From the NCBI RefSeq assembly GCF_021869535.1, contig NW_026262690.1:83080001-83144000 (forward strand): a stretch of 64,000 nt of DNA. Reading direction: 5' to 3'. Below the pieces are notes generated by a model. It searched no databases. It worked only from the letters and a program-made list of their open reading frames with translations, and was not told the DNA's origin. The first letter of the stretch is position 1, and the number at the start of each line of letters is the position of its first letter. This stretch comes from Mytilus californianus (taxonomy: Eukaryota). Shown here piece by piece: positions 833 to 23,341 of this stretch. The translations under genes were made by a program, and so were the position numbers.

Positions 833-2791
833 CTGACACCTATTAGCTTGTCGTAATGTTCTATTGTATTGTTTATTTGTGTGTTTCTCTGTCCTGCGTG
901 TTCTTCCATTTATTTGTATTGTAGTCCTGTCATGTAACGTTGTCATTTTAGTGTTATATTTAACATTGCCATTAAAGCGGGATGTTTGGCTAGCCACAAA
1001 ACCAGGTTCAACCCACCATTTTTTCTTAGAATGTCCTGTACCAAGTCAGGAAAATGGCCATTGTTATATTATAGTTCGTTTCTGTGTGTTTTGCATTTTA
1101 GTGTTGTGTTTCTGTTGTGTCGTTGTTCTCCTCTTATATTTGATGTGTTTCCCTCAGTTTTAGTTTGTTACCCGGATTTGTTTTTTTCTCAATCGATTTA
1201 TGAATTTCGAATAGCGGTATACTACTGTTGCCTTTATTTATAGATGTAAAATATATAACAATATCTCTGTAAAACATAGCCATTGTTTGCGTTACAATTA
1301 TGTGTTATTTTTTCAAGATTGCACTCTACCGAAATGTACAATTTAATCTATTACTATCCACAACTATCGTCTCCTTTCTATAAACATTTATAAATTTAAT
1401 AACGATCAGTAAACACATTGGAAACATGTCAGGCTCATATCTTCTTACTGCTTTCCTTAAACAAGCTTTAATGGTCAAGATAGTTAAATGCATTTGACCA
1501 TTAGGTTGTTTATTTCATATATCAGAATTCATTTCGGTTTCAGTAAAATTGGAAAAAAATGCCTTGCTTATGACAACAAAGAACCTTAATAGTACCTGTA
1601 TACACGAACGAGAAAAAAATATTTATCAAATAGTTATAAAATGGCAAGAGCGATAGTTTTACCGATGCTCGTCCGGTCATTCTGTCCTTCCAAACACTAT
1701 TAGTTGTCAAGACTTTTTTCGCTACGCTTGTTGATGTTGTGCTGATATTTTTGTGTAGATGTATGTTGTTTTGTTAATGTTTCGTTTCGTTCTGTTGGCT
1801 TACTTTTACTTTGAAAGAGGTGGAGTTAAGAGGCGCCCCTACCCTACCCTGTTGAGCTACATATATGGTTAATGCATTGACTTTAACAAGTCCCTCTCAT
1901 GGCGTTGCCTTGGTGGGTCCCCCTTTTAAAATCCTGAATCCACAACTATTAGGTCCCATCCGTGCTTTCCTGATTCATTGATAAACTGAGTTCAGTAGCA
2001 TTAACATTATACACAATATGTTATTATCCCCGAAACATTTTCATTCTATAGTCGCCATATTTGATATGCAATTAAAACTCAGTTGAGTATATAATATTTA
2101 ATTCAATTAAAAACGTTCACACCTTCGTCAGCCATTATACATTAACCATTACGAGAAGACCTATCTAAAGAAATACAAACGAATGAAAAGTATATAAAGG
2201 AATATTTTATTTGTGCTTTGATTCCCTGAGTTTCTGTAGCATTGCAATTATTTCCGACAGAACTCTAGAGGAATGTGAAAAGCTGTTTTCATCTGAAAAA
2301 AATGTTAATAAAATTAGCAACCCTTCAAATTAAAAGAATGAGGGCTAAAACATAGTACATAAAATTAAACTTTCGATGACGCAGGTCAAAATAGTCTTTA
2401 GTATATATCTTTTTCTCTCATAATTTTGTGGTCTTAATTTATGACATGGGGATAACAATTTGCTAAATGTAATGGTGTCTTGCATGTTTACTCTTTAACT
2501 GTAAACAAATTACATACAATAAATTTACAATATACAAAGAAGGGATGTTTTCATAAATGGCCGCGATAAAATATTCCCTTTTGAATATTGATAAACTTTA
2601 AAAGAAAAAAAAGAAAAAGAAAATGTTTCACCGGAGAGAAGAAACGATTAAACGATTACAATCGAAGTTGTTATAAATTTTCGGTTGGTCGATTTTGTAA
2701 AGGTTATATTAAAAAAATACAGTTTAAACTCCACTGTCAATTTTTGCTATTTTCTAGGCAGTTCTGGTTATATATCTCCACTTTAGCTGTT

Positions 2792-5700
2792 TCAATTTTT
2801 GTTGCTTTGACTTCCTGAACACGGTCAACTAAGAAACGTGTATTAAACGCAGAAAAGTTTTTAAAACATAGGCGAAAGATACCAAAAGGACATTCAAACT
2901 CATAAGTTGAAAATAAGTTACCAACGCCATGGCAAATTACGCACAAGATGATACAAACATACCAGTTCCTTGTTTTTCAGTCTTGCTAGTGTCGGTAATG
3001 GAAGCTTTACTTTCTGGAACCCCTTTGAATGAAAGTTTTAAGAGAGATGAAAAAAACAATAGTATTAACATGTTTTCCTACTTTAACTAGATTTGTTTCT
3101 ATAGAAATCGACAACGTTGGACGACTCAAAACTGTCTATGACAAACAGGGCGATTTATTTTTTTTTCATCTAATTGTACTGCATGTATGTATTCTTAATT
3201 GATGTAACATTGAAGCAAACTCTCATACAGATTTAATACATATTGTAGTACTACCCCCCATCCTTTCCAAAAAAACACAAAAATAAACCCCAAAGAAACA
3301 CAATCACAAATGCAAATCAACCAAAAAATCTAAATAATAAAAAAAAACAAAAACAAAATAGAAAGCACCAATAAACAAAAATATTACAAACTACATAAAC
3401 AGGGGTTACAAAAGAATATGTTGTACATAGAGATACATTCATTAATAAAACATATATAATGTGTACTTTTTTAAATAATAACAATTCTATAACAAAAACG
3501 TAAAATCATAAAAAAAACTATTTTTGTAATGGATGTCAGTTTTATACCTTTAGCCCTATCAGTGAGTTCTATTTAATTAAACAAAAGCAATATTCAATAC
3601 TTAACGAGTGATTTTCAAATTATTTTTTTTTCAATTTGTTTACGCTTTTTTTTTGTTTCATCTCCATACATCCCATATACCATTGTCATTGATAATCAAT
3701 ATATAAAAACCTGAGTATACAGTTTTAAAAAAATTACCAGGCCAAGCATCTGACCATTTTCCATTCCACGACTCTTTACTGTTTGTCGACCCCTTTGTAC
3801 CTTTTTGTCCTAAAAATGAAACAATTCAATTCACAATATCAAACCGCACATTGAAATGTTGGGCACCTTTTTGCTTGTTGAAATACCACATGATGGGAAA
3901 GTTATTTTGAAAAATAAAAAAAGGCATGAGCTGAGATCTGATTATCATTATTGGTTTTTTACGTCATTCGTAATTCTCAATTATTATGGTTATAAATGAT
4001 CGTACATGCTTAAACAGAAGTATAACAGGACAAGAATATGAAGCCCTTACATTGCAGGGAGGAACTGTACAGCTGTTGTAAACAACTTTTTAGGAAACGT
4101 TGTAGACAGCACAGGCTGTACTGTTTACTTTGGTCATCTGTCTATTTTATACTTTAGACGTCAAAGCGTTTTATAGAATTTTCATGGACACAATTCTTCT
4201 AAATTCAAGATTTTAAGATGCGATTCTTGTTAACCATTCCGTTATATGCTTATATATTTACTAAAACTTACTTTTGGTAATATTTTTTATGAATATTTTT
4301 TTTTTTAGTTACTGAAAAGTATTTAGTTTCAAGTTACCAGGCATTTCCTGTTTCCATGCTTCGGCCCAAGATTTTGCCGTATCACTGTCTGACGAAGATT
4401 TTCCTACAACATGAGAAGCTAATTGAAAATTGAACATTTCTGAGATATTTTATGTAAAAAGATGATGGTTTATGTTTATTAGTCATTTGTGTTGACAAAG
4501 AATATTCTTTATATGTTCATTTTTCTATAAATTTACTGTGAATTTTTCGAAAGACTTTGGTTTTTCTACCCCAGCTATAGATTGCATTAGCCTTATTTGG
4601 CACAATTTTTTGAAACTGTGTTTTTTAATGCTCTTTAAATTCAAATTCGAATTTGATTAGGCCTTCTAACTGTTTTCATTCGAGCGTCACTGATGAGTCT
4701 TATGTATAACAAGACACGTTTGTGGTGTACAGAATTATAAGCCACTACTGGTGAACGGTTCGTTCCCTGGAGTATCACTAGTCTAGTAGTTAGAACTTTT
4801 GTGTTGGCATGAAATATCATTGAAATGTTAATTTTTTTGTCGATTTACTGTCTATAAAAAATGCTGAATTATTAAAACAAACTAAGGTTTTCTAGCTCCA
4901 GGTATAGATTGCCTCATCCTCATTTGACACAACTTTTTTTGATTTTCAGTTTCACTTTATTGCTCTTCAACTTCGTATTTGATTTGGCCTCCCAACTGCT
5001 TTGATTCGAGTGTGTCTCTGATGAGTTTTACGTATACGAAACGCGCGTCTGGCGTACAAATTATAAACCTTGTATTTTTTATGAGATTTTATGTATCAAT
5101 ATTTATAATAGAACAAAGAAACAGCAAATTTTCCACAAAAGTTGTTGGTGGTTTTTCTTACTTTGCAAGTTCTTTTTTGAATTTGGCTGCGACTAAAGAA
5201 TTATCATCAAACACAGGATATCAAATCTAATCATGTATGCTTATAGTTCTGCACTGCTATAACCTTTTAAATGCATTGGGCACATTTCATTGTGGAATTA
5301 TATGCGACTATCATACAAGTGAGAGGTTCAGCTAGCTATAAAACCAAATTTAATCCACCATTTTCTACATAAGGAAATGCCTGTACCAGGTCAGTAATAT
5401 GATATTTGTTTCCCATTTGATTGATGTGTTTGAGCTTTTGATTTTGCCATGTTATAAAGAACATTCCGTTTTGAATTTCCCTTGGAGTTTGGTATTTTTG
5501 TTATTTCACTTTTTGATTGATTTTGTATAGTATATTGCTTTGTTTTGCTATAACATCAGCGACTCTAGTTAAGAACCGCAGAAATGTTGAAATCCGTGCA
5601 AATACTATACATCCGGTCACATACCAAGAGCAAGTAGTACAACAGTTTTAGTTGTCCTAAATACTTAATATTTTCAAATGTTTGTCATTGTGATTTTATA

Positions 5701-8700
5701 TACTACCGTTAACCTATGGGTGTTTTCTCATTATTGCAGTGACCAATAGCTTCATCGATGTTTGCTTTAAATTGTTGGCGTTTTTATACATTAAGTATTT
5801 ATACTGTTTCCATTCTAACAACAATAAGTCCTGACTTAAACATGTATTATTCCATATTTATTTCAGATATATTTAACCCTTCTACCAAGAAATTTGTTTC
5901 GCATGCACACGTATAAAAATTGCGGTTTTTGTCCAACGCAATCATAGGTTTGAACGTTGTTTTCAATTTAGACTTATTTATATTTTTTCGTTTGGGCTTG
6001 TATTATATTTGCCTTCGGGTTTATATGATCCGTTCATCCTATTTTGACTCTTTAAAATTCAAGAGTCTATCCTAAATTGAGGTAAATTATATGGCCTTCC
6101 AAATACTGTTTCGATTGCTAACATCACTGAAGAGACATTAATTGTCGAAATCCGGATATGGTGTACAAATTTTTGCACCTCATGTTTGCGGTTTGCCATC
6201 TTTTCCGCAATTTTATTGTTTTCTATTTGGTATTAAATGAATAAATTAAATAAAGATTCATTTTGTTACATCTTGTGATCCGTTTATTTGGCAATCGCCA
6301 ATGGCAGTCAGCAGGGTTTAAGAACATCCGTTGTTCGACCTGTTAGTCAAATGCGTTTGTTTAAATATACTTTTTAATTTTTTTGGTCTTTTGGAAAATG
6401 TTGTTTGTGCTGTATTTAGACCCTTCTACCAAGAAATTTGTTTTGCATGCACACGTATAAAAATTGCGGTTTTTATCCAACGCAATCATAGGTTTGAACG
6501 TTGTTTTCAATTTAGACTTATATATATATATATATATACCTGGCCATGAGCCGTCCCATGTCTTCAGGTTATCTTTCCCTAAAAAGGAAAACAAGCGTAG
6601 GAAAATTAGATATTAATTACAGATGTATCGAACTTTCAAAACCTTTCAGACATTATGTCAACGTTAAAAAAAATTAAAATGCTCGAACGTAAAACAGACT
6701 TAAAACAAGTGGATGTAGACAATCTTTTACAAAAGCTATTGCGAATTAGGGTGTATACATGTACATTGATTATGACATTGTCCCGACACATGTAAAATGG
6801 TGTGGATGTCAATATTCATCAGTTAAAGACAGGGGTAGATTTTGTCGGGATTGAGGTGCATTTTCCTTTGAATAATGGCATACAGGGAAGGACTATTAGA
6901 TTTTTAGGGATGAGTCAAATGTATACATACGTCGTGAATCTACAATTGAAATAAAATTTAAATGAGAACGATATAACATACCATGCTGGTTATGGTTTCC
7001 ATGGCCAGTAACAATCAATTGTTCTTCATTTGCAGTATTCCCAAAATGTGTTTCTACATTTAATTCTGATGATGTTGTTTCTATTGTCGTCTGCTCATTT
7101 TTGCTTTCACCTGTAAATGATTTTTTTTGCTACAATATTCGAAAAAGAGATAGAGCCAATTTCTCTTAAATTTTTTTTTCACTCCAGGATCATTTTCAAA
7201 CTGTTTTCCAATCAATGAGAAATAATCATAATGACATGTACAGCTTCATTTGTGTACAAGATTTTGATGTATTTCTGAACATTATATCGTTCACATTTCT
7301 GAACGGTATATCGTTCAAATTGCAAACGCCCAAAGATTGTTCTAAGTGCAATTCTGTTCGATATGACCAATTTTATCGAAAAAAAAAACCTGATAGGATG
7401 GACATTCAAAGCCAAAACTAAACTCTTTTGGAAGTAACGCTATATGCTTTGTCTTTCAAACACAAATCATTTTTTGTTGGATAAGGATATTCTTGAAAAC
7501 AATCTTTGTTAAAAAAAATATGCAAAATTTGCACAGCAATATATTAATACTGTCTTCAACATCAATGTATATCGCTGAATAACTTTTTGAATTTATAAAC
7601 TTTATGGCTATGAATGTAGGAATCATTTCCTTGCTGTGCATGGGAAATCAAATTAACTTTCTTTGCTTTAAATCGTCAAAGCTAAACCGTATTACGAATA
7701 TGTAATATGTCTTCGAATTACTGGTTTTGAAGTGCCTTTGAAGGTAAACTAAAAATCAACGCTTCGGATGCACCATAAGTGTTAAGTGAACTAATTATTA
7801 TCAATAACAATAAGGAATAAAGAGTTGTCATTCTTTAGCTGTGAAACAAATAAATACTTGCAGTTTCATATATACAGTTCCGTACTATTCTACAGAGCAA
7901 TTAAAACTTTAGCATTTGACCCATTTTTAATTTGAGCTAAACTTAGAACTTAGATAAGCTAAAAATGGATATAAGCTATGGGTTACCTGTATTTGGCCAA
8001 GAACCATCCCATGTCTGCTTCCAAGCTTTCTTGTTATTTACTGAAAAATACAAAAATGTATATATATGGAACAGCTAAACCACCTGTTTGTGCTATGCAT
8101 TCAGTTTCGATGTGTTTACTACCATCAACTTGCTTAGAAATGGAAATAAGCTTAGACGTTGAATAAAAAAGAGCTAAAACTAATAATAAGCATATGAAGT
8201 ACCACTTACAGTTTTTAAAGTATTGGTTTGGATCATATTTTCCTAAAAATCCAAGATCCCCTGGAATAAAAGCTACAAAGAGACAAAACATTTATATTAT
8301 ATAAAAAAGATTCAGTATAGGTATGAACAATGGACCTCTATTCGATTGCAAGTTTTTAGCAATTTCTATATGTTTAACTTTATTCATTTATACTTGTCCC
8401 ATACCAATACTGGTGAACCGTCAGTAACATGCAAATTCTTCATCAGTATAGCCAATGTAGCCTATCCAGCGCACTTAGCATGATTGATTAATACAAGCAT
8501 TTTGGGTATGCTATAAGTTGCTTTTTCAATTCTCTTTGATAACGTTTATATTCGCTGGTTTTGGATATTTAATTTATATCTTTTTCGGTTATGTGGCTTG
8601 TCGTATGTTAATATGTCGTCGGCACTCCAAAAAAAACTTCGATCCTTTTCTGAATAAGGTTAAAACCGAAAAGATTTTCGGACGGAAATTGTTCTGTTTG

Positions 8701-11700
8701 ATTAACTATACCATTATATACAAGAGGGTGCGAAATATTAACAATGTCTTTAAAAATCAAAATTTTTTATTCATATTCCTTCAAATGATTCCAATGTTCT
8801 AATTTGTCTTTGATCCGAATTAAAAGATTGGAATGATTTCGGAATACTACGTCGTTTTTCATGAAAGATTTTTTTTAAACTTTGTACCCTCAGGAACGAC
8901 ATGTAGTGTTCGACCTGTTTGAATTTAGTTTATGCTAGAACATTTTAAAGGGTTGTGATTTCCAAAATTCATATTTTTAAAACATCAAGAATTAAACTAA
9001 AGCTTTGGTTATGTACACAGTGGAAAAGACATCTGACATACTAAATAAACTGTATTACCTAAATTACAAATTTTAACAAATCAACAAGAAACTTGGATAA
9101 GAAAAATTATTAACTAGGAGAACTTTCCATCTTCATCAATCGGCTAATCACGTCTGCTCCATACTAAGAATTTTTTCTTAAAATAGACTCAGCTGCTATG
9201 ATTGTTTTCATATCCGCAACTTTCCATTCTTGAGTAGTAACACCATATATGTCAAGGTCAAATCTCAATTGATATGATATGCCAAATTCTTATAAAACAG
9301 TTTTAAAAACAAAGTTACACTCTCATCTCAACTCAATAGCGGTCTTAGATCATTGTATGCCGGTGTAATCGTCTCGTCTGTGATTTTACCGATTGTGTCC
9401 TATTTCCGATTGTGATATTTTGACTACTTGAATTCGCATGCATAGCAGGAGACGCTTACCCTGTCGATGAACCCGTTCTATTTCCTTTTGAAATTCGTGC
9501 GATTCTTTCGGTTTTTAGTTGTTACCCTTATTTGCCCCTTCCTAATCGATTTACGAAATTTAAACATCGGTCAACTGCTGTTGTCTTAATTAATTTTAAA
9601 ACTGACCTTATCAATGTGACAAAGAAGAACGACTTATCCCTATTCACATGTTACACGAATTGAATAATTGTTATACATCGTAGTTTTGTAATTATTGCGG
9701 AAATCATATAATACCCTTTCTCAATAATAATGTTTCAACTCTGTCATACATCCTTCATGACAAATCCACGTCAATCCAGTACCATGACTGTTTTTATATA
9801 TATTCATTGCTTTAACACTTGCTAATGAATGTATATTAGGAATTACTTACCCTGTCGACGGCAAAAATCTTATTACTTTGAAGATTTATGAGATTAGTGT
9901 GTTTTTTTTTTATTTCCATCTCTGAATGTTTTACCTTATCAGCTGACATTCGTTGACAACCTCCATGTGATATGACGAAAACGTGAATATCAATCTTCAC
10001 ATACTCGACGAAACAACACATTTTTGGTTAAAAAAAAATGCACAAGGATCAATTTTGAAAAAAAATGTTTGCCCATAATTTAATTTCCAAACATTTATTG
10101 AAAATCTAGGCAAGTCGCATCAATCAGTCATATTATTTTGAATGGCAGACCATATTCACGTATATGGAATCAGTATTATATGCCAGTATGCAGATGTTCA
10201 AAAGTGTTTGTGTTGCGGGAGGGTCCACCTGAGCTATTATTGTCACTTGGCGTCCGTCGTCGTAGTAATTAAATAATAAAAAAACATGTCAATCTATTCT
10301 AAACTTCGCCATAATAAACCTATAAGTGTCTTCTTTAAAATTTGAGTAGATTATACTCATTACACAATTTTGTTTTACCGCCATGGCTTAATATAGAACA
10401 TAATGGTAAACAGCAAAGTAATCAGCAAATAGGTCATCATAATAGAAATCAACAGAAATCGATATTTGCAGTTATTTCTTATTAGAGTTATTGCCCTTAA
10501 ATGGCGTATTTAACCCATTTTCCGGTTTTTGGCTATTATTTCGGAAAACTAGAATACATGACCCCTATGGTACGACTTAAAAGACATTCAGGGAAATTCG
10601 TTTAAATTGTCTTATAGGACTTGCAAGGCGAATTGGCTCCATGCGTGTTCACAATAATCCTTATATATGATTACGTTGACTATGTCACTCTGCTAAGCAA
10701 CAAACATGGCCTTACTACTTTATATCAAGACAACTTTGTTTAAATATTGAACACACAGAGTGTTTTCAGATTTGAGACAGATTTATCAGTCTATTAAGCC
10801 CCCAGTCGATGAATCCTCGGTAAATATCGTGTGATTTCATAGTTTGGCTAATTAGGTTACACATGCGCAGTTAATCATGGAACTGGATTATTTTCATTGA
10901 TGTTTCTGCTATTTGTCAAACAATGGCCGCCACATTCAAACTTTTCAAAGGGGGACATATAGAGAAAATATATGTTAGTATAAAAATAAATAATCATGAA
11001 TAGCATTGCTCTTTAATTTATATAACTGTAATGCACATGTATCTACTTTTAGTGCCAAGCGAGAGGATCAGGCTCATGCTAGCCTCAAGTTAAAAGAGTA
11101 AAACACTACATACACACATCATTTGTCATGTTCAAAGTGACAGAGGCATCAGCAATTTAGATAGTAAAGATTAGAAAATACAAACAAAAAGCAAATAGGT
11201 AGTAATACATATAAAGATATGAGGGATGGTAAATGAGATAACTATACATAAAGACCAAATGACAAAGATGAAAACAATAACAAGTCCCCATACGGTGTTT
11301 TTAAATATTTCGGTATCACACGGGAAACTCCATACTAAAATTTACGACAACAACAACAAAAAAAAACGATTTTTAGATCCCTATTGTTACTTTTCCTTTT
11401 TTGTACGGTGATGTTCCTTTAGCTCAATCTTACAGTGTTTATTTATCCCAACTCGTTCGCTATGCCCGTGTCCGTACTGACGTTAAAGATTTTAATGAAC
11501 ATAATCTATGTATTACTGGTAAATAATTAATTCAGGGATTTCGTTATCACAAATTACTGAAAACCTTTACTACATTATTTTATAGATACAAACAGCTGTT
11601 TTGGAAGTTTTGATGGTACCTGTAGAAAGCTTATTATTAACGGTTTTATAACATCCTGATTTTTGCGGTGATGTTGCTTTGAAATCCCGTAAAACTAGAT

Positions 11701-13891
11701 ACTATCCAGGTAAGCCTATCGATCATTAAAAATAAACTTATTCTAAAAGGTTATCAATTTAATAAAATCGTTGAATATTGTTTTAATCTACTCATATTGA
11801 TTTTGTTATCAAAAATTTACATCGTAACTAAATATGTATTGCTATATTTATTAACACTTACTGTTCTACATCCTGTCGATACTTAAATTTTGGCATTGCA
11901 TAAGGGCATGTTTCCGAACGTCTTTACACCAAATCCATTGGATAGGTGCTAATTGATATTTTGTCTTGGATACATTTTTTTATTAGTTGTTATTGGCTCT
12001 TAACTAGCCTTCGGTAACTTTGAGTACCCTCAAATCGGTATTTTATATATCCAGTCAGGAACCTGTACTTCAGTGGTTGTCGTTTGTTGCTGTATACCAT
12101 AATTGTTCTTAATTTGTTGCTTTGCAAATAAATCAGGGCGTTAGTTTTCTCGTTTAAATTGTTTTACATTTTGTCAAGTCGGTGCCATGTCATTTGGTCT
12201 CCAGTGGATAGTTGTATCGATGGCAATCATATCACATCTCCCTATTTGATATTCTTTCAACTGATTTTTGAGACTTTTTCAATTTTCTATCATACATCCC
12301 GCGACAGGTTAACAGAAGTTAAGCGAAAGGTCTTTGGATACTCGTAAAGTTGTATGTTCATAATCATTATAAAAACAATAGCCAAAAACCGTAATGAGTA
12401 AGCTCTACGATATTTGGATTAAGAGTTGAATGTCAGGTTAAACCTGCTAACGTTAGGCGATTTGGCAACAAGCATGTTTTACAAGATGCAAAAGTTATAT
12501 ATATAAAATTTTATTTCTGTTAAATTATGCATACACCAAATGTTGTTACTGTGCTGAGTGTTGTAAAATTCTAGTTAACAACAGTGAACTACCCTTCCCT
12601 AGAAATAAAAATATGGTTATGTTGATTTTTGATTGCTTGTTGTTAAATATGTCTATTGTGGTATTCTGTATATAAGAAATGAATGCTTCTTTTTGTAATT
12701 TTATTGGGGTGTAAAAGCGGTGACCGAAGCAATGTTTGTTTCCGATCTGCTTCATACTAAGAATCTGCGCACGATCAACGCTTTTGCACAGAATAAAATT
12801 ACAAAAAGAAGCATTCAATCTTATAATTATATTTTTATGCTTTAGCCGGGAAAATCTTTTTTTTCTGTTTTTTTTCTCTATGTAATGTTGTCACGGGAGG
12901 CACGTGCTGTCATGGATGTTGCATTTTATTGAATGCCTCTCGATTGTTGTCAGGCAATCAAAAGTACAGATTCCTATGAAACATACATGTATATGTGTAA
13001 TTATTCATGGTTGGCCGTCACATTGACGTATGCAAAACGTCTTCTTTTATTCATATTATCTAAATAAATGAAAATTCAAAATAATTGCTTTCTTTGGTAT
13101 GTTTATTAATGATTAGTTTTATCATATTGATTCATGTTGTATTTAACCATTTTTTTAATAAGTGAAAAGTCTCTTGCAAAAATAACAGTGCACCTTTTTA
13201 CAATTAAACCCTTTTGCAATTGGAATTCAACGTAAATTAAATCTCTATCTCAACAGAATTTTGTAAATCAACAAATGTTTTAGAAAATATTGCTTACCAG
13301 ATTCTGTCTCCAAAGATCTTCCTAAAATTACAAAATATAAACCAAACAATAACTTGGTTGACATGATGGAATTATTCGAAAAGCACCTGTCCCGGTGACG
13401 CGCGCGTCATTGAAGATATGATATCAACCCGACATTGATAAGTAAGTTTATGTCTACAAAACGAGATATATAGATACCTTGAATTTTGAAAAATGATAAT
13501 TATATTCGAATTATCATGCATTATCTTGGAAAAAAACAATTATGTATACGAAGCTTTGAAACAGGTACAAAAATGTGGGGCTTACATAGCATTTTATTCT
13601 GTTTGGTGCTTACATTTATATACGACAGATTGCATGTATGATTATTCTTTTTATATTGCAAAGATTATGAAAATCGTGAATTTTGAACATCCACTGAACC
13701 TGTATTTTTTTTGGAAAAGGCATAAATAAAATTCTACGGAAATATATTGTTCACGACACTAATAAGACTTTATACGGTCATTGACTATACCATCTTCCGT
13801 TGACTCTTTTGGCTTTCTCGAAGTTTTGCTTTTTATTACCGAGTGTGTGAGCAACAAACAATGTAAATAATACGGACGTTCCGTGCCACAT
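2792..13891 (-). CDS. Gene D: secreted micro-exon protein with Trp motifs and one YDPN motif (~202 aa model)
   Basis: Exons 13891-13840, 13321-13298, 8914-8888, 8272-8210, 8040-7987, 7110-6982, 6578-6540, 4403-4338, 3809-3738, 3022-2963 and a tentative last exon 2814-2792. All introns are GT-AG and phase 1, and the join is stop-free: MWHGTSVLFTLFVAHTLG RSLETES GRTLHVVPE AFIPGDLGFLGKYDPNQYFKN LNNKKAWKQTWDGSWPNT GESKNEQ...GHGNHNQH GKDNLKTWDGSWP GKSSSDSDTAKSWAEAWKQEMP GQKGTKGSTNSKESWNGKWSDAWP GVPESKASITDTSKTEKQGT GSQSNKN*. The 3' end is uncertain and further micro-exons may have been missed. Confidence 0.7.
2963..3022 (-). CDS. Gene D 60-nt exon (GVPESKASITDTSKTEKQGT)
   Basis: Acceptor ctttcattcaaag and donor G|GTATGT; symmetric phase 1. 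Confidence 0.65.
3738..3809 (-). CDS. Gene D 72-nt exon (GQKGTKGSTNSKESWNGKWSDAWP)
   Basis: Acceptor tgtttcatttttag and donor G|GTAATT; Trp motif. Confidence 0.75.
4338..4403 (-). CDS. Gene D 66-nt exon (GKSSSDSDTAKSWAEAWKQEMP)
   Basis: AG/GT bounded, symmetric phase 1, Trp motif. Confidence 0.7.
5013..5054 (+). ncRNA. Minimal type-I hammerhead ribozyme motif, core intact but stems imperfect
   Basis: TGTCT-CTGATGA-GTTttacgtaTAC-GAAA-CGCGC-GTC-TGGCG: the conserved CUGAUGA, GAAA and GUC are present; there are mismatches in stems I and II. Confidence 0.55.
5877..6521 (+). repeat. Pair of 101-bp direct repeats (5877-5977 and 6421-6521)
   Basis: cccttctaccaagaaatttg...ttagacttat occurs twice with 2 mismatches, 544 bp apart. 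Confidence 0.9.
6122..6163 (+). ncRNA. Structurally intact minimal type-I hammerhead ribozyme
   Basis: Stem I CATCA/TGGTG, core CTGAAGA, stem II GAC-attaatt-GTC, GAAA, palindromic stem III ATCCGGAT, NUH triplet AUA with predicted cleavage after 6158. Confidence 0.7.
6519..6538. repeat. (TA)10 microsatellite directly at the 5' splice site of the gene D 39-nt exon
   Basis: Seen directly; the minus strand reads CCAG|GTATATATATA... Confidence 0.9.
6540..6578 (-). CDS. Gene D 39-nt exon (GKDNLKTWDGSWP)
   Basis: Acceptor ttgttttcctttttag and donor G|GTATAT; repeats the TWDGSWP of the 8040-7987 exon with different codons. Confidence 0.8.
6982..7110 (-). CDS. Gene D 129-nt exon (acidic, Thr-rich, ending GHGNHNQH)
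   Basis: Acceptor tcatttacag and donor G|GTATGT; 43 open codons. Confidence 0.75.
7987..8040 (-). CDS. Gene D 54-nt exon (LNNKKAWKQTWDGSWPNT)
   Basis: Acceptor tttttgtatttttcag and donor G|GTAACC; symmetric phase 1. Confidence 0.8.
8210..8272 (-). CDS. Gene D 63-nt exon (AFIPGDLGFLGKYDPNQYFKN)
   Basis: Acceptor ttttgtctctttgtag and donor T|GTAAGT; carries the family FIPG and YDPN motifs. Confidence 0.8.
8888..8914 (-). CDS. Gene D 27-nt micro-exon (GRTLHVVPE)
   Basis: Acceptor aacag and a weaker donor G|GTACAA; symmetric phase 1; resembles the exon-like segment at 6339. Confidence 0.55.
13298..13321 (-). CDS. Gene D 24-nt micro-exon (GRSLETES)
   Basis: Acceptor ttttgtaattttag and donor G|GTAAGC; symmetric phase 1. 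Confidence 0.7.
13840..13891 (-). CDS. Gene D exon 1 (signal peptide MWHGTSVLFTLFVAHTL)
   Basis: ATG, hydrophobic core, phase-1 donor G|GTAATA. Confidence 0.7.
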
Positions 13892-17573: not shown

Positions 17574-17953
17574 TTAGAAATTTAAGAGATCAAAACTCTT
17601 ACTTGCGCCTCTGGATGTACCAGATGTTCCTCCCATCATTGCGTTCATGGGATTCGTACCGCTACCACTCCCACTTCCGCTTCCGGATCCTCCCATCATA
17701 CCACTCATCATATTCATAGGATTCAAATTCATTCCACCTCCGCTACTGCCCCCCGTGCTTCCACCACTGCTTCCGCCTGTACTCATAACTGAATTAGCCC
17801 CACTCATCATTCCAGAGGATCCACCCATTAATGAACTTGCATCCATTTTGCTTGGGTCTCCACCTTTAGCTCCGCCAAACATGTTTAAGCTTGTACCTAA
17901 CTGAGCTTGTTGCATATTGACAGAGCCAGGATCAAAGCCACCGTTAGTTTTAC
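17574..17953 (-). CDS. Gene A terminal exon (FDPGSVN, GDPSKMD, LNPMNMM, Met/Gly-rich)
   Basis: ORF 17574-17966 trimmed to the acceptor at 17954. Confidence 0.88.
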
Positions 17954-20900
17954 CTGTAACATTCATAGTTCAAATCCAGTCAAGAAACAACAATGATAAT
18001 AATTTTGACGGTATCATTACGTTATTACCAATCTTGGTTAACCTTAACACATAAAAAATCCTCTTTTCGGAAGACCAAATATTGTTACAACTATCTCAAA
18101 ATAATCCTTTTTATGAATAAAAAGAGATACCATGGGTTATGCGTCAATGAGACAGAAATCCAACGTTACAATTAACCAAAGTGCATATACAACTACAACT
18201 ACAGACTGTACGTGTAGCGTATACATATCTCCACTGCAAACATTTTAAAATGCATCCTTAATTATCAAATCAATTACTAGTGTCGAAAAGAATATTTTTT
18301 GAAAGTAAAGAACACCTTCTCGATTTCTTCAGTTTAGGCCACAGTTGGGTTTTTTAGTTTTGCGTCCGTTTGCTGGTAGATTTTTAATGGTCTGCGGTAT
18401 ACAAAAAGACAAACGCAAAAATATTTGAGAAAATCGTACAAAAATCAAGAAATTATTATTCTAAGGCTTCATTTGAACTTTATACATGTGTAATGATCTC
18501 CTTAATCAGTATTTTGTTCAAAATTTAAAATATTATATATTACTGAATTGCAGTTTGTTGAATAAATTATTGAACAAGATCGATTTCCGTGTTAAAAATT
18601 TATTTTTGGGTGTATATTTAATCTTATATGGCCCTAGCTGAATTTGATAATTTATAGTTCTTAGTTCATTTTAGAATAAACAATGTACTATGCCACAAAA
18701 AAAAATCAGAATTAACTTTATATGTTCAATAGGAGAGTGCTGTATCCACGAACAATGTTTCACCATAAAAGTTTACATGCAGAGATGCTATAAATGCAAA
18801 GGTTTTAGGCGGAATTCAGCGTCTTGAATTTCGACATCTTAAAATTTAACAAATTTTAAAGAACATTTTGTTTCCATGAATCAACTTGACTGAAAAAAGA
18901 GGAATCATCCATCTTTTATTAGTTTCACTCAAAGTATTAAATAGGAAAGTCGTTGAAACTTAGTGGATTTGAATGTTTAAAACTCTGGATAATACGATTT
19001 AAAGAGTTTCATCAATTTTACATACAGTCTTAACAAAACATTATTCAAAGCTGAAAAGTTTTGATATGCTATTGCAAAGTTTTCATGTTTTGTCAAATTT
19101 TGCATCGAAGGACATCCGGTACCAAAATAAATTAACTTGCTTCTTAACGATAATAAGAAGCTTTACTTCCGCTAGAACTTTGTTCTATTTGAAATTCTCT
19201 TTCTTTCTCATTTCTTTTTAAAAGTTACCAAAATATACAAAAGAAAGCAATTTTGTAAGTTATCTCAAAGCTGTATATAATAGGGTAAAGTGTTCAGAAT
19301 ACAATGTAATGTTGTTAGCAGTTCAAGTTACACACATAAAGCCGTGATAAACATTGCATTTTATTCCAGTTGAAAAGATTTTGAAAGAGGCCCCGCTGTG
19401 AAATTCTTTTGGAAATTGGCTCTACCTCCTTATCCTCTAGGAATGACATTTTGGATGAATTTTATAATCTTGGTATTTCTGAGTAAATAAAGTGGTAATC
19501 AGATAAACTACCAGTCTGTATTTATATGATACTGTTATTGTAGATATTTACCACATCCTGTTTTCGGTCCCATGAATTTACTCATAGTATTTCCTCCTAT
19601 AAAATATAAGAATAGTAACTAAATAAGCTAAAGTGTGCATAATCTATTAGATGTATGTATAGAAGGAAAAAAAAAACAATTCATGTTATCGAACAAATAT
19701 TTCTATCATATATATTCCTCAGTGAAGGTCAACGTTCATGAAATACATTTGTATTGCAGCACGCAATTACAGCTAAATATGTTGAAATATAAAAATTCCT
19801 TTAGAGAAATTAAGTTTCCAAACATTTACTGAAAAGTTTGCATAGATGTTTTTTAATTTGACTTTTCTTGTGATAGTTTTACCCAAAACAGTAGTTGTCT
19901 AATCTGCACAATTATCAGTTCGTGGACATCAATCATACCTAAAAGCGGATTTAGTGGGTTAAAACCGGAAGTTCCTCCTGTATTGGCGGCTACTGGATCA
20001 AAAGAAGCTTGTTGTCCGCAATTTGACTGTTGACTTGTTGCTTGTTGTTGACCCCCTCCGACAGACTGAGGCTGCTGACTACCAGAGCCAGATTGAGGCT
20101 GTTGACTTCCAGAGCCAGATTGAGTCTGTTGACTACCAGAGCCAGATTGAGGCTGTTGACTACCAGAACCAGATTGAGACTGTTGACCCAATGCTTGACC
20201 AAAACTTGATGCTGAAGACTGTGATGGTTGACCTGAAGCTTGTCCAAAGCTAGATGCTGCCGATTGTGGTTGCTGTCCTGAGGCTTGGCCAAAACTAGAC
20301 GGGGACTGTGATCCGGATTGTTGGCTTGGTTGACTCGTAGTCTGTTGCCCACCAGGCGGTTGTTGTTTTGCATTAAACCCCATACCGTTTGCAAAAGATG
20401 GTTTTGCTCCCCCTGAAGAACCACCCATTCCACTGTTTGCAGCATTAGGGTCATACTTGGCGCCAGTATTTACAGCATTGTTTGGGTCATACTTTGGCAT
20501 TGTGTTTGAACTGCTACCACCACCACCACCATTCATTTGTTGTGCTCCACCAGACATCATCTGATTCTGATTGAATGACATTCCACCGGATGTTCCGCCA
20601 GATCCACCCGATGACATCTGTGCATTTGGGTTAAACATACCAGTTCCAGATGACTGACTTGATTGTGCAGGACTATTTGTTGACTGAGATGATTGACTCT
20701 GTTGGGAATTTTGTCCACTGTTTGAAGGTTGCTGTTGACCTCCCATCATGGCATTCGGATTAAACATACTTCCTCCTGATCCACCTGATGACTGAGACAG
20801 ACCACCAAATTGACCTCCACCAGAGCTGCCACCAGAGGTGCCACCAGATCCACCCGATGACATCTGCGCATTCGGATTAAACATACTACCTCCTGATCCA

Positions 20901-23341
20901 CCTGATGACTGAGACATACCTCCACCGGAACTGCCACCAGAGGTGCCACCAGATCCACCCGATGACATATGCGCATTCGGATTAAACATACTTCCTCCTG
21001 ATCCACCTGATGACTGAGACATACCTCCACCAGAGCTGCCACCAGAGGTGCCAACAGAACCACCCGATGACATCTGCGCATTCGGATTAAACATACCAGT
21101 TCCAGATGACTGACTAGAACTTCCTGACTGCTGAGGATTACTTGTCGACTGTGATGATTGACTCTGCTGTGAACTTTGCCCACTGTTTGCAGGTTGCTGT
21201 TGACCTCCTCCCATCATAGCATTAGGGTTAAACATACTTCCACTAGAACCTCCACCTGTGTATTGGGACATCATCTTATTAGGGTTGAAGCTTCCATACA
21301 AAGAAGATGAGGACGAAGATCCACCAAGGAAACTCCCCATCATTGAATTAGGATTAAAACTTTGTCGGACTGTAAGAATTGTATTACGATTAAAATCAGG
21401 ACTATCAAACAACATTGAATAAATACTATCTAGAAATATATATACATGTATATGTTAATATCAGGAATATAATACTAGTATATAAGTTTGCGACGTTGTG
21501 TTGATTTTTCATCGTTATGTCTTCATTTATATTTTGTGAGGCCTATCTAGTCCTTTGCTACATGTAAAAAGTGTAGTTTTCTTTTTCAATATCTCCATGG
21601 ATATTAAAGACAAAACGGTTTGCAAAGAATGATAGGCTGATGGTACAATTCACTGTGGGTGACCTATTATGAGGTCCATCGTGGGAACTAACTGCTAATA
21701 TCATAATCAAAATTTATCACTAATTACAAGGCATCAGCTTAAGCATTTCTTGATTATCAACGTTTTCAATTCGTTTCGAAGCACCCGATTTCATACCCGG
21801 ATTTGGTGGGGTTCGTGTTGCGCAATATTTGGTAGCAATACACAGTTATGAGTTTGGTTTCGCATTTTTGCCCCTGTGAATTTTTCAAATATGAAAGTTA
21901 TTGTGCAATAAAATCAATTATTAGATAGCTGAAGAATAATATAGCCTTCAAAGTGAGTTCATATGAACATCCAGTTTGTTTTTTGCATGTTTTATAGGAC
22001 ATTTTCTGTTTGACAGTCCGTATTTTCACATCCGGTACTGTCATAGGTCCAGAAATTATTGCAATGTTTTCCAACAAATATTTTAAGCTCGAACTTTTCA
22101 ATTCAATTTTATGGAAAAAAGAGAAAAATGCATATGTTTTTTATTGGATCTCTTGATAGATAAATGTCAATGATTTTAGAAAAGGCATCTTTCAAATGGA
22201 TTGAAATTCTACTTTGGACAAAATTATGGGGCATTTGTGACATTTTCACCCCCTTTTTGCAATATTTGTATCAAATAAATGCCGATTGTTGCCATGGTTA
22301 CACCAAAAAGAGATTATATTTCGCCATTTTAATCATTGGAAATGAAATCTAAATGCTGTTTCTAAACATACGCACACACATTATACAACCAGTAAGCCTA
22401 ATTTGTTACAAAGCAAGGGAAAGAGGGTGGTTAAAAATTGTGAGTGTCAATTTTAAGTTCTTTTCCTAACTGTGTATTGCTACCTTTAGTTTTCTCTTTT
22501 TTTGTGTATTGTGGACTTGTTTGTCGTTTCGTCGTTTTTCGTGCTTTGCCATGACGTTGTCTGTTTATATTCGTCTTATGAGTTTTTTTTAATGTCTCCT
22601 TGGTATTTTTCGCACTTTTTTATGTTATAATAAAATGTCATCTTTATTGTGTAGAACTGCTGACCCATCCGGAATCCTCGGTTTTTGGTTGCTACATGGT
22701 GCTCAATGTTTAGTTTTCTGTGTTTTGTTTTGTGGACTTGTTTATCTGTTAGTCTTTTTTTTTTATTTTGACGATGGTATTCCTGTCTTTGATCGACTTA
22801 TGGTATTGATTACAATTTTATGGTATCTCCCTTCTCTCTTTTTTTTTTAAATTAAAAATGTGAATTTGGTCTATATGACACGTGATCTCAAAGATTATAA
22901 ATCTAAAATAAATATGCTTTGTAAGTACCAGATACCGATCCAGGATTTTGAAAAAGGGGACCGCAGGCCCCCAAACTAGACAAAATGTGTAGAGGAACCG
23001 GTAAAAAGTCTGGATTAACCATAAATGCGGGCACCCCGCCCCCCTCTTCCCCCTTAAATCCGCCTCTGAGTACGTAATCAAAAACCTCCATTTCGATATC
23101 TGATTATGCGTAAGGGTGTTTGGAGTTGAACAGTGGTTTTGCTTGACATCTCATCCGTGACGCTTGTTTTCTCAATGACATTTGACCGATTTACATAAAT
23201 TATAAATACGTAAAATAGATTTTTTTTTTAGAATTTCATCGCGAAAGTGTTGAAGGTGACAAATTCAGACTCACCATTTCGGTCAGTTCTGGTCACAATG
23301 ACCATACACAAAAATGTAAATATTGTATTTAACGGTGCCAT
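17574..23341 (-). CDS. Gene A: secreted Gly/Ser/Gln/Met-rich protein with FNPN repeats (625 aa model)
   Basis: Exons 23341-23275 (MAPLNTIFTFLCMVIVTRTDRN, donor G|GTGAGT), 21369-19939 (acceptor cttacag, donor G|GTATGA) and 17953-17574 (acceptor gttacag, ends TAA TAG). All introns are phase 1 and the total of 1878 nt is in frame. Confidence 0.85.
19939..21369 (-). CDS. Gene A exon 2 (477 codons of MFNPNA-(G/S)n and SQQPQSGSG repeats)
   Basis: Core of ORF 19853-21415 trimmed to splice sites; contains ~105-bp and 27-bp internal repeats. Confidence 0.92.

What the first reader, a model, noticed from the sequence alone, without database searches (positions are those of the whole stretch)
2963..13891. 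Gene D is a micro-exon gene: nine symmetric phase-1 cassettes of 24-129 nt invisible to the ORF track
Seen: after the signal exon come internal exons of 24, 27, 63, 54, 129, 39, 66, 72 and 60 nt. Every length is a multiple of 3, every intron is phase 1, and most junction codons are Gly, so any subset can be skipped without a frameshift. Established: this is the architecture of schistosome micro-exon genes (MEGs), which generate secreted variants by exon skipping. Inference: combinatorial isoform diversity in a molluscan secreted protein, probably missed or mis-annotated by gene predictors.
Basis: partly seen in the sequence, partly recalled or inferred. Interest (0 to 1): 0.75.

Follow-up and report, generated by a model that had tools for sequence, protein, structure and literature searches.

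The report
Mussel secreted Trp-repeat gene, small symmetric exons
This is a real, already annotated California-mussel gene for a secreted, floppy, tryptophan-repeat protein built from seven small in-frame exons, one of which is optionally skipped; that is a familiar layout for secreted proteins, not a schistosome-style micro-exon gene.

Summary
The gene is RefSeq LOC127738709 of Mytilus californianus. Its isoforms X1 (195 aa) and X2 (182 aa) use exactly these exons and differ only by the 39-nt exon.

Against two M. coruscus loci the exons are islands of conservation. Exon identity is 73-93% and 45-nt flanks are 51-75%. dN/dS is 0.24 at dS of about 0.5.

Three parts of the reading fail:
- The signal exon at 13891 lies in a roughly 600-bp stretch that M. 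coruscus lacks.
- The '24-nt exon' is the tail of the likely first coding exon (ATG 13364 to 13298). That exon encodes a conserved signal peptide missing from every public model.
- The 27-nt exon was not found.

I add a terminal exon at 2292-2207.

The internal exons are 39-129 nt, so they are small but not micro. The gene is single copy, Mytilus-restricted as far as searched, and unrelated to MEGs. No RNA reads fell on the exons in four runs. Only one skipping event is on record, so combinatorial diversity is unproven.

The product is Cys-free and disordered. It has four Trp units (W-x3-W(-x3-W)-P-G) and a conserved C-terminal helix. Its function is unknown.

The parts
13466..13472 (-). TATA-like element about 105 nt upstream of the proposed start codon (candidate core promoter)
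   Evidence: Read directly. It lies inside the block 13492-13284, which aligns to both M. coruscus loci at 75-78%. Its function is inferred.
13298..13364 (-). Proposed first coding exon (67 nt): ATG with A at -3, a 22-residue hydrophobic signal-peptide-like N-terminus, a GTAAGC donor, and phase 1.
   Evidence: ATG, reading frame and donor are conserved in both M. coruscus loci. Exon identity is 88% and flank identity 64%. Hydrophobic core. It is absent from RefSeq and from the M. coruscus models.
8210..8272 (-). Internal exon, 63 nt, phase 1-1. Encodes an FIPG...YDPN motif.
   Evidence: 90-92% nt identity to M. coruscus, acceptor conserved. dN/dS is 0.2-0.3. RefSeq's start codon at 8291 reads through this acceptor. 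That ATG is ATA in M. coruscus and the frame there is broken by indels.
7987..8040 (-). Internal exon, 54 nt, phase 1-1. Trp unit 1 (three Trp at i, i+4, i+8, then Pro).
   Evidence: (94-100% aa identity). dN/dS is 0-0.05.
6982..7110 (-). Internal exon, 129 nt, phase 1-1. A fast-evolving hydrophilic spacer without Trp.
   Evidence: 51-56% aa identity. dN/dS is 0.3-0.44.
6540..6578 (-). Cassette exon, 39 nt, phase 1-1. Trp unit 2. Present in RefSeq isoform X1 and skipped in X2.
   Evidence: It is intact in both M. coruscus loci (39 or 42 nt, frame kept). dN/dS is 0.05-0.14. Neither M. coruscus model includes it.
4338..4403 (-). Internal exon, 66 nt, phase 1-1. Trp unit 3 (W, W, then Met in the third place).
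   Evidence: In M. coruscus it carries in-frame stops at different codons in the two loci and has no alignable acceptor, so it is a dead exon there.
3738..3809 (-). Internal exon, 72 nt, phase 1-1. Trp unit 4 (three Trp).
   Evidence: 87% aa identity. dN/dS is 0.07-0.13.
2963..3022 (-). Internal exon, 60 nt, phase 1-1. Ser/Thr/Lys-rich linker.
   Evidence: It is 66 nt in M. coruscus L009, with the frame kept.
2206..2292 (-). Terminal exon with a phase-1 acceptor. Encodes the conserved amphipathic C-terminal helix. Stop TAA at 2209-2207, AATAAA at 2211-2206.
   Evidence: (96% aa identity). dN/dS is 0.07. Helix 174-193 is the only confident element of the AlphaFold model.
13840..13891 (-). Rejected as part of the gene.
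   Evidence: It lies in 14096-13492, which has no counterpart in M. coruscus: the flanking blocks abut within 25 bp there. Part of that stretch is a dispersed repeat. It has T at -3 of the ATG and no tblastn match.
12510..12605 (-). Highly conserved single-copy element in intron 1. It may be an alternative terminal exon or a regulatory element; unexplained.
   Evidence: About 97.5% identical to both M. coruscus loci. Single copy. No Rfam family. It has an acceptor, a short phase-1 ORF ending at TAA 12548-12546, and a conserved AATAAA at 12515-12510 (read).

Best explanation
Gene D is a single-copy protein-coding gene, found so far only in Mytilus. It is RefSeq LOC127738709 of M. californianus, and its product is a secreted protein of about 211 residues.

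Gene layout (shown, except where marked):
- A first coding exon (ATG 13364 to 13298) supplies the signal peptide and ends in phase 1. This start is inferred from conservation.
- Seven small 1-1 exons (63, 54, 129, 39, 66, 72, 60 nt) and a terminal exon follow.
- Four of the exons end in a duplicated unit, W-x3-W(-x3-W)-P followed by a Gly codon split by the intron. The array therefore most likely grew by tandem duplication of one phase-1 exon (inferred).
- The Gly junction codons are a by-product of G|G at phase-1 splice sites (inferred).

Consequences of the symmetric exons:
- Because every internal exon is symmetric, units can be removed in frame.
- The 39-nt exon is optionally skipped in M. 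californianus (RefSeq X1 versus X2; annotation level).
- The 66-nt exon has died in M. coruscus without breaking the frame (shown).

The mature protein is Cys-free and predicted to be disordered apart from a conserved amphipathic C-terminal helix.

Function is inferred with low confidence. I take it to be an extracellular 'sticker-and-spacer' protein. The Trp/Lys units would act as multivalent contact sites, the number of units would set the valency, and the C-terminal helix would mediate association.
For: - Exon coordinates, phases and splice sites.
- RefSeq isoforms X1 and X2, and the species. The 13-residue difference is exactly the 39-nt exon.
- Orthologous exons in two M. coruscus loci.
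- Conservation islands on the exons, with introns unalignable.
- dN/dS 0.24 overall, and 0-0.14 for the Trp units and the C-terminus.
- Conserved ATG and signal peptide at 13364.
- RefSeq's ATG at 8291 is not conserved.
- Single copy.
- No Pfam family.
- Disorder plus a C-terminal helix.
- All 10 Trp spaced i, i+4.
- 1-1 exons after a signal peptide are the classical layout of secreted proteins.
Against: - No RNA read or junction fell on any exon in the four runs laid on 2240-8239. One was a raw RNA-seq run, read to about 6%; three were contig sets. Transcription and both isoforms therefore rest on RefSeq's models, whose evidence I could not see.
- No public model contains the proposed first exon. 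One M. coruscus model joins gene A's last exon to these exons.
- The signal peptide was judged by hydrophobicity and conservation only, without a dedicated predictor.
- The first exon itself shows dN > dS on very few sites.
- Function is speculation.
Confidence: 0.8

Rival explanations
1. This is a MEG-like variation system in which many subsets of the symmetric exons are skipped, giving a combinatorial pool of secreted isoforms.
For: - All seven internal exons are 1-1, so every subset keeps the frame.
- One skipping event is annotated.
- About 76% of the CDS lies in symmetric internal exons.
- One exon has been lost in frame in a sister species.
Against: - Only two isoforms are on record.
- No junction reads were seen.
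- Exons are 39-129 nt and none is 36 nt or less, against 6-81 bp and mostly 15 bp in MEGs.
- The gene is single copy and has no gene family.
- The Trp-unit exons are under strong purifying selection, which points to constitutive use.
- Symmetric 1-1 exons are common in secreted proteins that have no such variation.
Confidence: 0.12
2. The exons are not a separate gene. They are alternative 3' exons of the upstream gene A (17574-23341), as in the fused M. coruscus model.
For: - M. coruscus protein P0002 joins gene A's last coding exon to the 54-, 129- and 66-nt exons.
- The same strand and the same neighbourhood are found in both species.
Against: - A conserved ATG with good context, a conserved signal-peptide frame and a TATA-like element lie between the two genes.
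- RefSeq keeps a separate locus.
- The second M. coruscus model (P0005) is not fused.
- The two M. coruscus models disagree in frame in their bridging exon, as ab initio artefacts do.
Confidence: 0.05
3. It is a decaying or non-functional locus, a pseudogene or annotation artefact that makes no protein.
For: - Zero depth on all exons in four runs.
- No relatives outside Mytilus.
- One M. coruscus copy lacks the last two exons, and both have a dead 66-nt exon.
Against: - dN/dS is 0.24 at dS of about 0.5.
- Frames and splice sites are intact in eight of nine exons across species, and the indels are multiples of 3.
- RefSeq has two isoform models.
Confidence: 0.03

Closest known systems
Schistosome micro-exon genes (MEGs)
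   Same: - The product is secreted and has a signal peptide.
- Most of the CDS lies in symmetric exons separated by much longer introns.
- Exon skipping keeps the frame and changes the protein by a few residues.
- The gene is lineage-restricted and its protein is disordered.
   Different: - Exon size is 39-129 nt here, against 6-81 bp and mostly 15 bp in MEGs.
- Only one skipping event is recorded.
- The gene is single copy rather than part of multigene families.
- There is no sequence similarity, and MEGs are reported only from platyhelminths.
- The Trp-unit exons are under purifying selection, whereas accelerated evolution is reported for MEGs (title and text of PMC4350168).
Classical 1-1 exon (exon-duplication or exon-shuffling) genes of secreted modular metazoan proteins
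   Same: A phase-1 intron follows the signal peptide, then come phase 1-1 exons each carrying one module. Split G|GN junction codons arise from AG|G proto-splice sites (PMC7259759 and the references in it).
   Different: The modules here are short disordered repeat units (12-23 residues) and not folded domains. The units arose within the gene and were not imported from other genes.
Neighbouring bivalve F-[D/N]-P-[N/S] repeat protein genes
   Same: - They lie adjacent on the same strand.
- They are secreted, Cys-poor and disordered.
- The 63-nt exon carries an FIPG...YDPN motif like those in the 880-aa ORF at 40376-43018.
   Different: - The similarity is not significant (BLASTP E = 0.42).
- Gene D has one such motif and then Trp units that the neighbours lack.
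- The neighbours have large exons.
Lys/Trp-rich lead domain of pearl-oyster KRMP shell matrix proteins
   Same: A short Lys- and Trp-rich region in a small secreted bivalve protein (described in PMC3896809).
   Different: No alignment was made or found. KRMPs have a Gly/Tyr domain and a basic C-terminal signature that are absent here. This is a resemblance in composition only.

Membership tests
Schistosome micro-exon gene (MEG) | The product carries a signal peptide, so it is secreted or membrane-anchored | tested here: met
   A conserved ATG exon 13364-13298 with a hydrophobic core. This rests on conservation and hydrophobicity only; no dedicated predictor was run.
Schistosome micro-exon gene (MEG) | Most of the coding region lies in symmetric exons (length a multiple of 3, same phase on both sides) | tested here: met
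   Seven of seven internal exons are phase 1-1 and hold 483 of 633 coding nt, or 76%.
Schistosome micro-exon gene (MEG) | Those exons are very small (6-81 bp, mostly about 15 bp) | tested here: not met
   Sizes are 39, 54, 60, 63, 66, 72 and 129 nt, median 63, and none is 36 nt or less. The claimed 24- and 27-nt exons are not exons.
Schistosome micro-exon gene (MEG) | Alternative splicing by exon skipping yields a pool of protein variants | tested here: inconclusive
   One event is annotated: RefSeq X1 and X2 differ by the 39-nt exon. No RNA reads fell on the exons in four runs.
Schistosome micro-exon gene (MEG) | Sequence membership in one of the MEG families, which are restricted to platyhelminths | tested here: not met
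   The only relatives are Mytilus proteins. There is no Pfam hit. The restriction to platyhelminths is stated in PMC4350168.
1-1 exon modular secreted protein genes | A phase-1 intron directly after the signal-peptide exon | tested here: met
   The first coding exon is 67 nt, so its donor is in phase 1, and the donor is conserved.
1-1 exon modular secreted protein genes | Internal exons are phase 1-1 and each carries one module | tested here: met
   Four exons each end in one W-x3-W(-x3-W)-P unit plus a split Gly codon. The other exons are linkers.
Bivalve F-[D/N]-P-[N/S] repeat protein cluster | Repeated F/Y-D/N-P-N/S motifs along the chain, and detectable similarity to cluster members | tested here: inconclusive
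   There is a single YDPN motif in the 63-nt exon. The best non-self tblastn hits of that exon fall in the neighbouring genes, but at E 0.2-8, and BLASTP gives E = 0.42.

The most novel reading that the evidence does not exclude
A mollusc has convergently evolved a MEG-like way of tuning a secreted protein. The number of Trp 'sticker' units would be set by in-frame cassette use. Within a species this happens by splicing: the 39-nt exon is skipped, and possibly others in the expressing tissue. Between species it happens by exon birth and death: the 66-nt exon is dead in M. coruscus. The near-invariant element in intron 1 would be an alternative terminal exon that gives a second, very short secreted peptide from the same signal exon.
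Probability: 0.15. Interest if true: 0.55.

Novelty: new member of a known kind. Interest (0 to 1): 0.3.

Why it matters
The case has modest value.
- It corrects the 5' end of a RefSeq gene. All public models lack the conserved signal-peptide exon, so the protein would not be recognised as secreted.
- It documents a Mytilus-restricted, Cys-free protein with a strictly i, i+4 Trp repeat that matches no known family.
- It gives a clean small example of how 1-1 exons allow a repeat unit to be skipped by splicing in one species and lost by exon death in another without breaking the frame.

It does not show a new mechanism. If the protein proved to be a shell, byssus or mucus component, the Trp/Lys units would be of interest for mussel materials chemistry.

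Tried and rejected
1. RNA evidence. The look-up of sequencing runs and read laying on 2240-8239 with four runs gave no depth and no junctions on any exon. All depth lay on intronic repeats (2856-2936, 4640-5640, 5840-6640). The small 'shares' of 0.05-0.09 were repeats and not exons.
2. The 27-nt exon. A scan of 13297-8273 for phase-1 AG..GT segments found seven 27-nt candidates. All have poor polypyrimidine tracts and donors, and none lies in a conserved island. Rejected.
3. Rejected.
4. Paralogues in the genome. Exon-by-exon protein searches and a degenerate DNA pattern for the WDGSWP unit found only the gene itself. The 2-mismatch pattern hits were no more frequent than the reversed-pattern control.
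5. Pfam on the exons and on the RefSeq and M. coruscus proteins: nothing.
6. Homology to the neighbouring FDPN-repeat genes: a motif-level hint only. The signal peptides are not alike.
7. The conserved intron-1 block as a structured RNA: no Rfam hit and no covariation.
8. Literature searches for the locus and protein accessions, for Trp-rich Mytilus proteins and for a WxxxW motif gave nothing relevant. One broad search for micro-exon genes in molluscs was badly posed and is uninformative.
Exons were searched one by one by reference, and the stored RefSeq protein P0004 served as the whole-protein query. A full-length model that includes the proposed first exon was therefore never searched or folded.
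Full report
**1. What is in the sequence**

- 8272-8210 (63 nt)
- 8040-7987 (54 nt)
- 7110-6982 (129 nt)
- 6578-6540 (39 nt)
- 4403-4338 (66 nt)
- 3809-3738 (72 nt)
- 3022-2963 (60 nt)

Each is flanked by AG and GT(A), has a length that is a multiple of three, and is open when read in phase 1. It runs 2292-2207, has a phase-1 acceptor, a TAA stop at 2209-2207 and an overlapping AATAAA.

Four exons end in the same unit. Trp residues sit at i, i+4 (and i+8), followed by Pro and a Gly codon split by the intron. All ten Trp of the mature protein obey the i, i+4 spacing.

Splice-like signals alone prove little. A loose scan finds 107 phase-1 AG..GTA segments on this strand of the window. The case therefore has to rest on other evidence.

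**2. Public models**

A HMMER search of the 42-residue product of the 129-nt exon against 1.84 billion representatives found a 100% match, P0001, and a 58% match, P0002. The cluster look-up names them:
- P0001 is XP_052106016.1, 'uncharacterized protein LOC127738709 isoform X2' of Mytilus californianus.
- Its cluster mate P0004 is isoform X1 (XP_052106015.1, 195 aa).
- P0002 is an unnamed Mytilus coruscus protein.

The word search with P0001 added a second M. coruscus protein, P0005, and nothing else.

Isoforms X1 and X2 contain the 63-, 54-, 129-, 66-, 72- and 60-nt exons and my terminal exon, with the junction residues that the phase-1 joins predict. They differ only by 13 residues, which is the 39-nt exon.

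So the gene is not missed by annotation, and one in-frame skipping event is on record. From my own knowledge of NCBI's Gnomon pipeline, alternative isoforms are built from transcript alignments. I could not see that evidence here.

**3. RNA**

The look-up of sequencing runs listed no certain RNA holder. I laid one raw RNA-seq run (about 6% of it, 10.3 million reads) and three contig sets on 2240-8239.
- Depth was zero in every bin that holds the 54-, 129-, 66- and 72-nt exons or the terminal exon.
- The bins of the 39- and 60-nt exons were covered only through the adjoining repeats (6420-6527 and 2856-2936).
- No joint at any exon boundary was listed.

The tissues are unknown, and the gene may be tissue-specific. 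This result limits what can be said about expression and isoforms. It does not show that the gene is silent.

**4. Comparison with M. coruscus**

The look-up of encoding contigs gave the two M. coruscus loci, L009 and L010. tblastn of the exon peptides finds every exon from the 63-nt one onward in L009, and those up to the 72-nt exon in L010:

| Exon | aa identity to M. coruscus |
|---|---|
| 63 nt | 85% |
| 54 nt | 94-100% |
| 129 nt | 51-56% |
| 39 nt | 83% |
| 66 nt | 68-72% |
| 72 nt | 87% |
| 60 nt | 71% |
| terminal | 96% |

- blastn of 18 kb of the window shows that, from 8315 downward, the alignable pieces are the exons with a few tens of flanking bases. The introns do not align, apart from repeats.
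- Local alignments give 73-93% identity inside exons and 51-75% in 45-nt flanks. AG and GT are kept, and all indels are multiples of three: the 39-nt exon is 42 nt in L009 and the 60-nt exon is 66 nt.
- Nei-Gojobori counts, summed exon by exon, give dS of about 0.5, dN of about 0.12 and dN/dS of 0.24. The ratio is 0-0.14 for the Trp-unit exons and the C-terminus, and 0.3-0.44 for the 129-nt spacer.

The phase-1 reading frame is under purifying selection.

**5.

It sits in 14096-13492. The blocks flanking that stretch in the window lie only 25 bp apart in L009, and part of the stretch is a dispersed repeat.

*The proposed first exon.* The block 13492-13284 is conserved, and the alignment shows three things:
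- That ATG, the 21 nt after it and the GTAAGC donor at 13297 are invariant.
- The 22-residue product has a Lys-containing N-terminus and a 10-residue hydrophobic core in both species.

The ATG has A at -3, and a TATA-like element lies about 105 nt upstream. I therefore take 13364-13298 (67 nt, phase 1) as the first coding exon. The '24-nt micro-exon' is its tail.

*RefSeq's start.* RefSeq starts both isoforms at an ATG at 8291 by reading through the acceptor of the 63-nt exon. In M. coruscus that triplet is ATA, and one- or two-base indels break the frame before the conserved acceptor. That start is probably an artefact of an incomplete 5' model.

*The M. coruscus models.* They are worse. P0005 starts in a block equal to window 14357-14281 and skips three exons. 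P0002 fuses gene A's last exon to three gene D exons and stops in the dead 66-nt exon.

*The 27-nt exon.* It was not found. No conserved island between 12411 and 8315 could hold it.

*Corrected model.* There are nine coding exons, eight phase-1 introns and a 633-nt CDS of about 211 residues. I did not build or search the joined sequence. Exons were handled one by one, and the stored RefSeq protein stood in for the whole.

**6. Cassette behaviour**

- The 39-nt exon is optional in RefSeq. It is the smallest exon, and from my own knowledge exons under about 50 nt are prone to skipping.
- The 66-nt exon carries in-frame stops in both M. coruscus loci. In L009 a Lys codon has become TAG, and in L010 a Trp codon has become TGA. 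Its acceptor region does not align either. One M. coruscus model skips this exon and the other terminates in it.

So symmetric exons have allowed a unit to be lost in evolution without harming the rest of the frame. Nothing shows that more than one exon is skipped within a species.

**7. The protein**

- Pfam finds nothing.
- Without the non-conserved RefSeq start, the chain has no Cys. It is rich in Ser, Lys, Gly, Thr, Asn and Glu, has 10 Trp and is near neutral in charge.
- AlphaFold2 on the four-sequence alignment gives mean pLDDT 44. The only supported element is a helix at 174-193. This is the most conserved part of the protein and is strongly amphipathic.
- Every exon is single copy in the 1.65-Gb genome.
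- The 63-nt exon carries an FIPG...YDPN motif, and its best non-self matches fall in the neighbouring F-D/N-P-N/S repeat genes. The similarity is not significant.

My reading of function is inference with low confidence. I take it to be a secreted sticker-and-spacer protein in which Trp/Lys units make multivalent contacts. From my own knowledge, cation-pi contacts between Lys and aromatic residues are well known in mussel adhesive proteins. The C-terminal helix would mediate association.

**8. Comparison with known systems**

Schistosome MEGs share the signal peptide, the symmetric exons holding most of the CDS, and the frame-neutral skipping. The differences are these:
- MEG exons are 6-81 bp and mostly 15 bp, against 39-129 nt here.
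- MEGs form multigene families restricted to platyhelminths and evolve fast.
- This gene is single copy, its repeat units are constrained, and it has no sequence relation to MEGs.

The better-fitting known kind is the ordinary metazoan secreted-protein layout: a phase-1 intron after the signal peptide followed by 1-1 exons, with G|G junctions from AG|G proto-splice sites.

Earlier notes of this scan describe another California-mussel gene of ten small coding exons for a secreted Cys-free disordered protein (s1-287924). The layout therefore recurs in this genome.

**9. Verdict**

Seven of nine cassettes are real. The signal exon, the 24-nt exon and the 27-nt exon are wrong, and the terminal exon is added.
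The gene encodes a secreted protein with frame-neutral cassettes, one skipping event is on record, and the 5' end is mis-annotated. It is not a micro-exon gene, and combinatorial diversity is not shown.
- It is a new member of a known kind, of modest interest.

Noticed in passing
window 12605-12510 (minus strand, intron 1 of gene D): A block of about 80 nt is about 97.5% identical to both M. coruscus loci, which is more conserved than any coding exon of the gene. It is single copy in the genome, has no Rfam hit and no covarying fold. It begins at a good acceptor, reads 17 codons in phase 1 to TAA (12548-12546), and is followed by a conserved AATAAA (12515-12510). It may be an alternative terminal exon giving a 40-residue secreted precursor, or an intronic regulatory element.
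   Followed up: partly
L009:24207-24272 and L010:21215-21280 (M. coruscus counterparts of window 4403-4338): The 66-nt exon has in-frame stop codons at different positions in the two M. coruscus loci and has lost an alignable acceptor. It is a dead exon in that species, yet the rest of the frame is unaffected because the exon is symmetric.
   Followed up: yes
L010 (M. coruscus contig CACVKT020008053.1), downstream of 22398: This copy, the one that lies next to gene A as in the window, has no detectable 60-nt exon or terminal exon, whereas L009 has both. The two loci may be divergent haplotypes or a partial duplicate.
   Followed up: no
window 14357-14261 (minus strand), between gene A and gene D: A block 87% identical to M. 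coruscus is used as a coding exon in both M. coruscus models, but in different frames. It may belong to the 3' end of gene A or be a conserved non-coding piece. The whole stretch 16171-12411 is collinear between the species at 68-88%, unlike gene D's introns.
   Followed up: no
window 4640-5640 and 5840-6640 (the intron between the 39-nt and 66-nt exons), and 2856-2936: High-copy repeats inside gene D's introns are very abundant in the RNA and contig runs, with summed word depths up to several hundred thousand. They accounted for all the 'shares' that the look-up of sequencing runs reported. A 108-nt direct repeat (5876-5983 and 6420-6527) flanks one of them.
   Followed up: no
window 6539-6518 (minus strand): The donor of the optional 39-nt exon runs straight into a (TA)n microsatellite that is absent in M. 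coruscus. Variation in its length could influence use of this donor.
   Followed up: no
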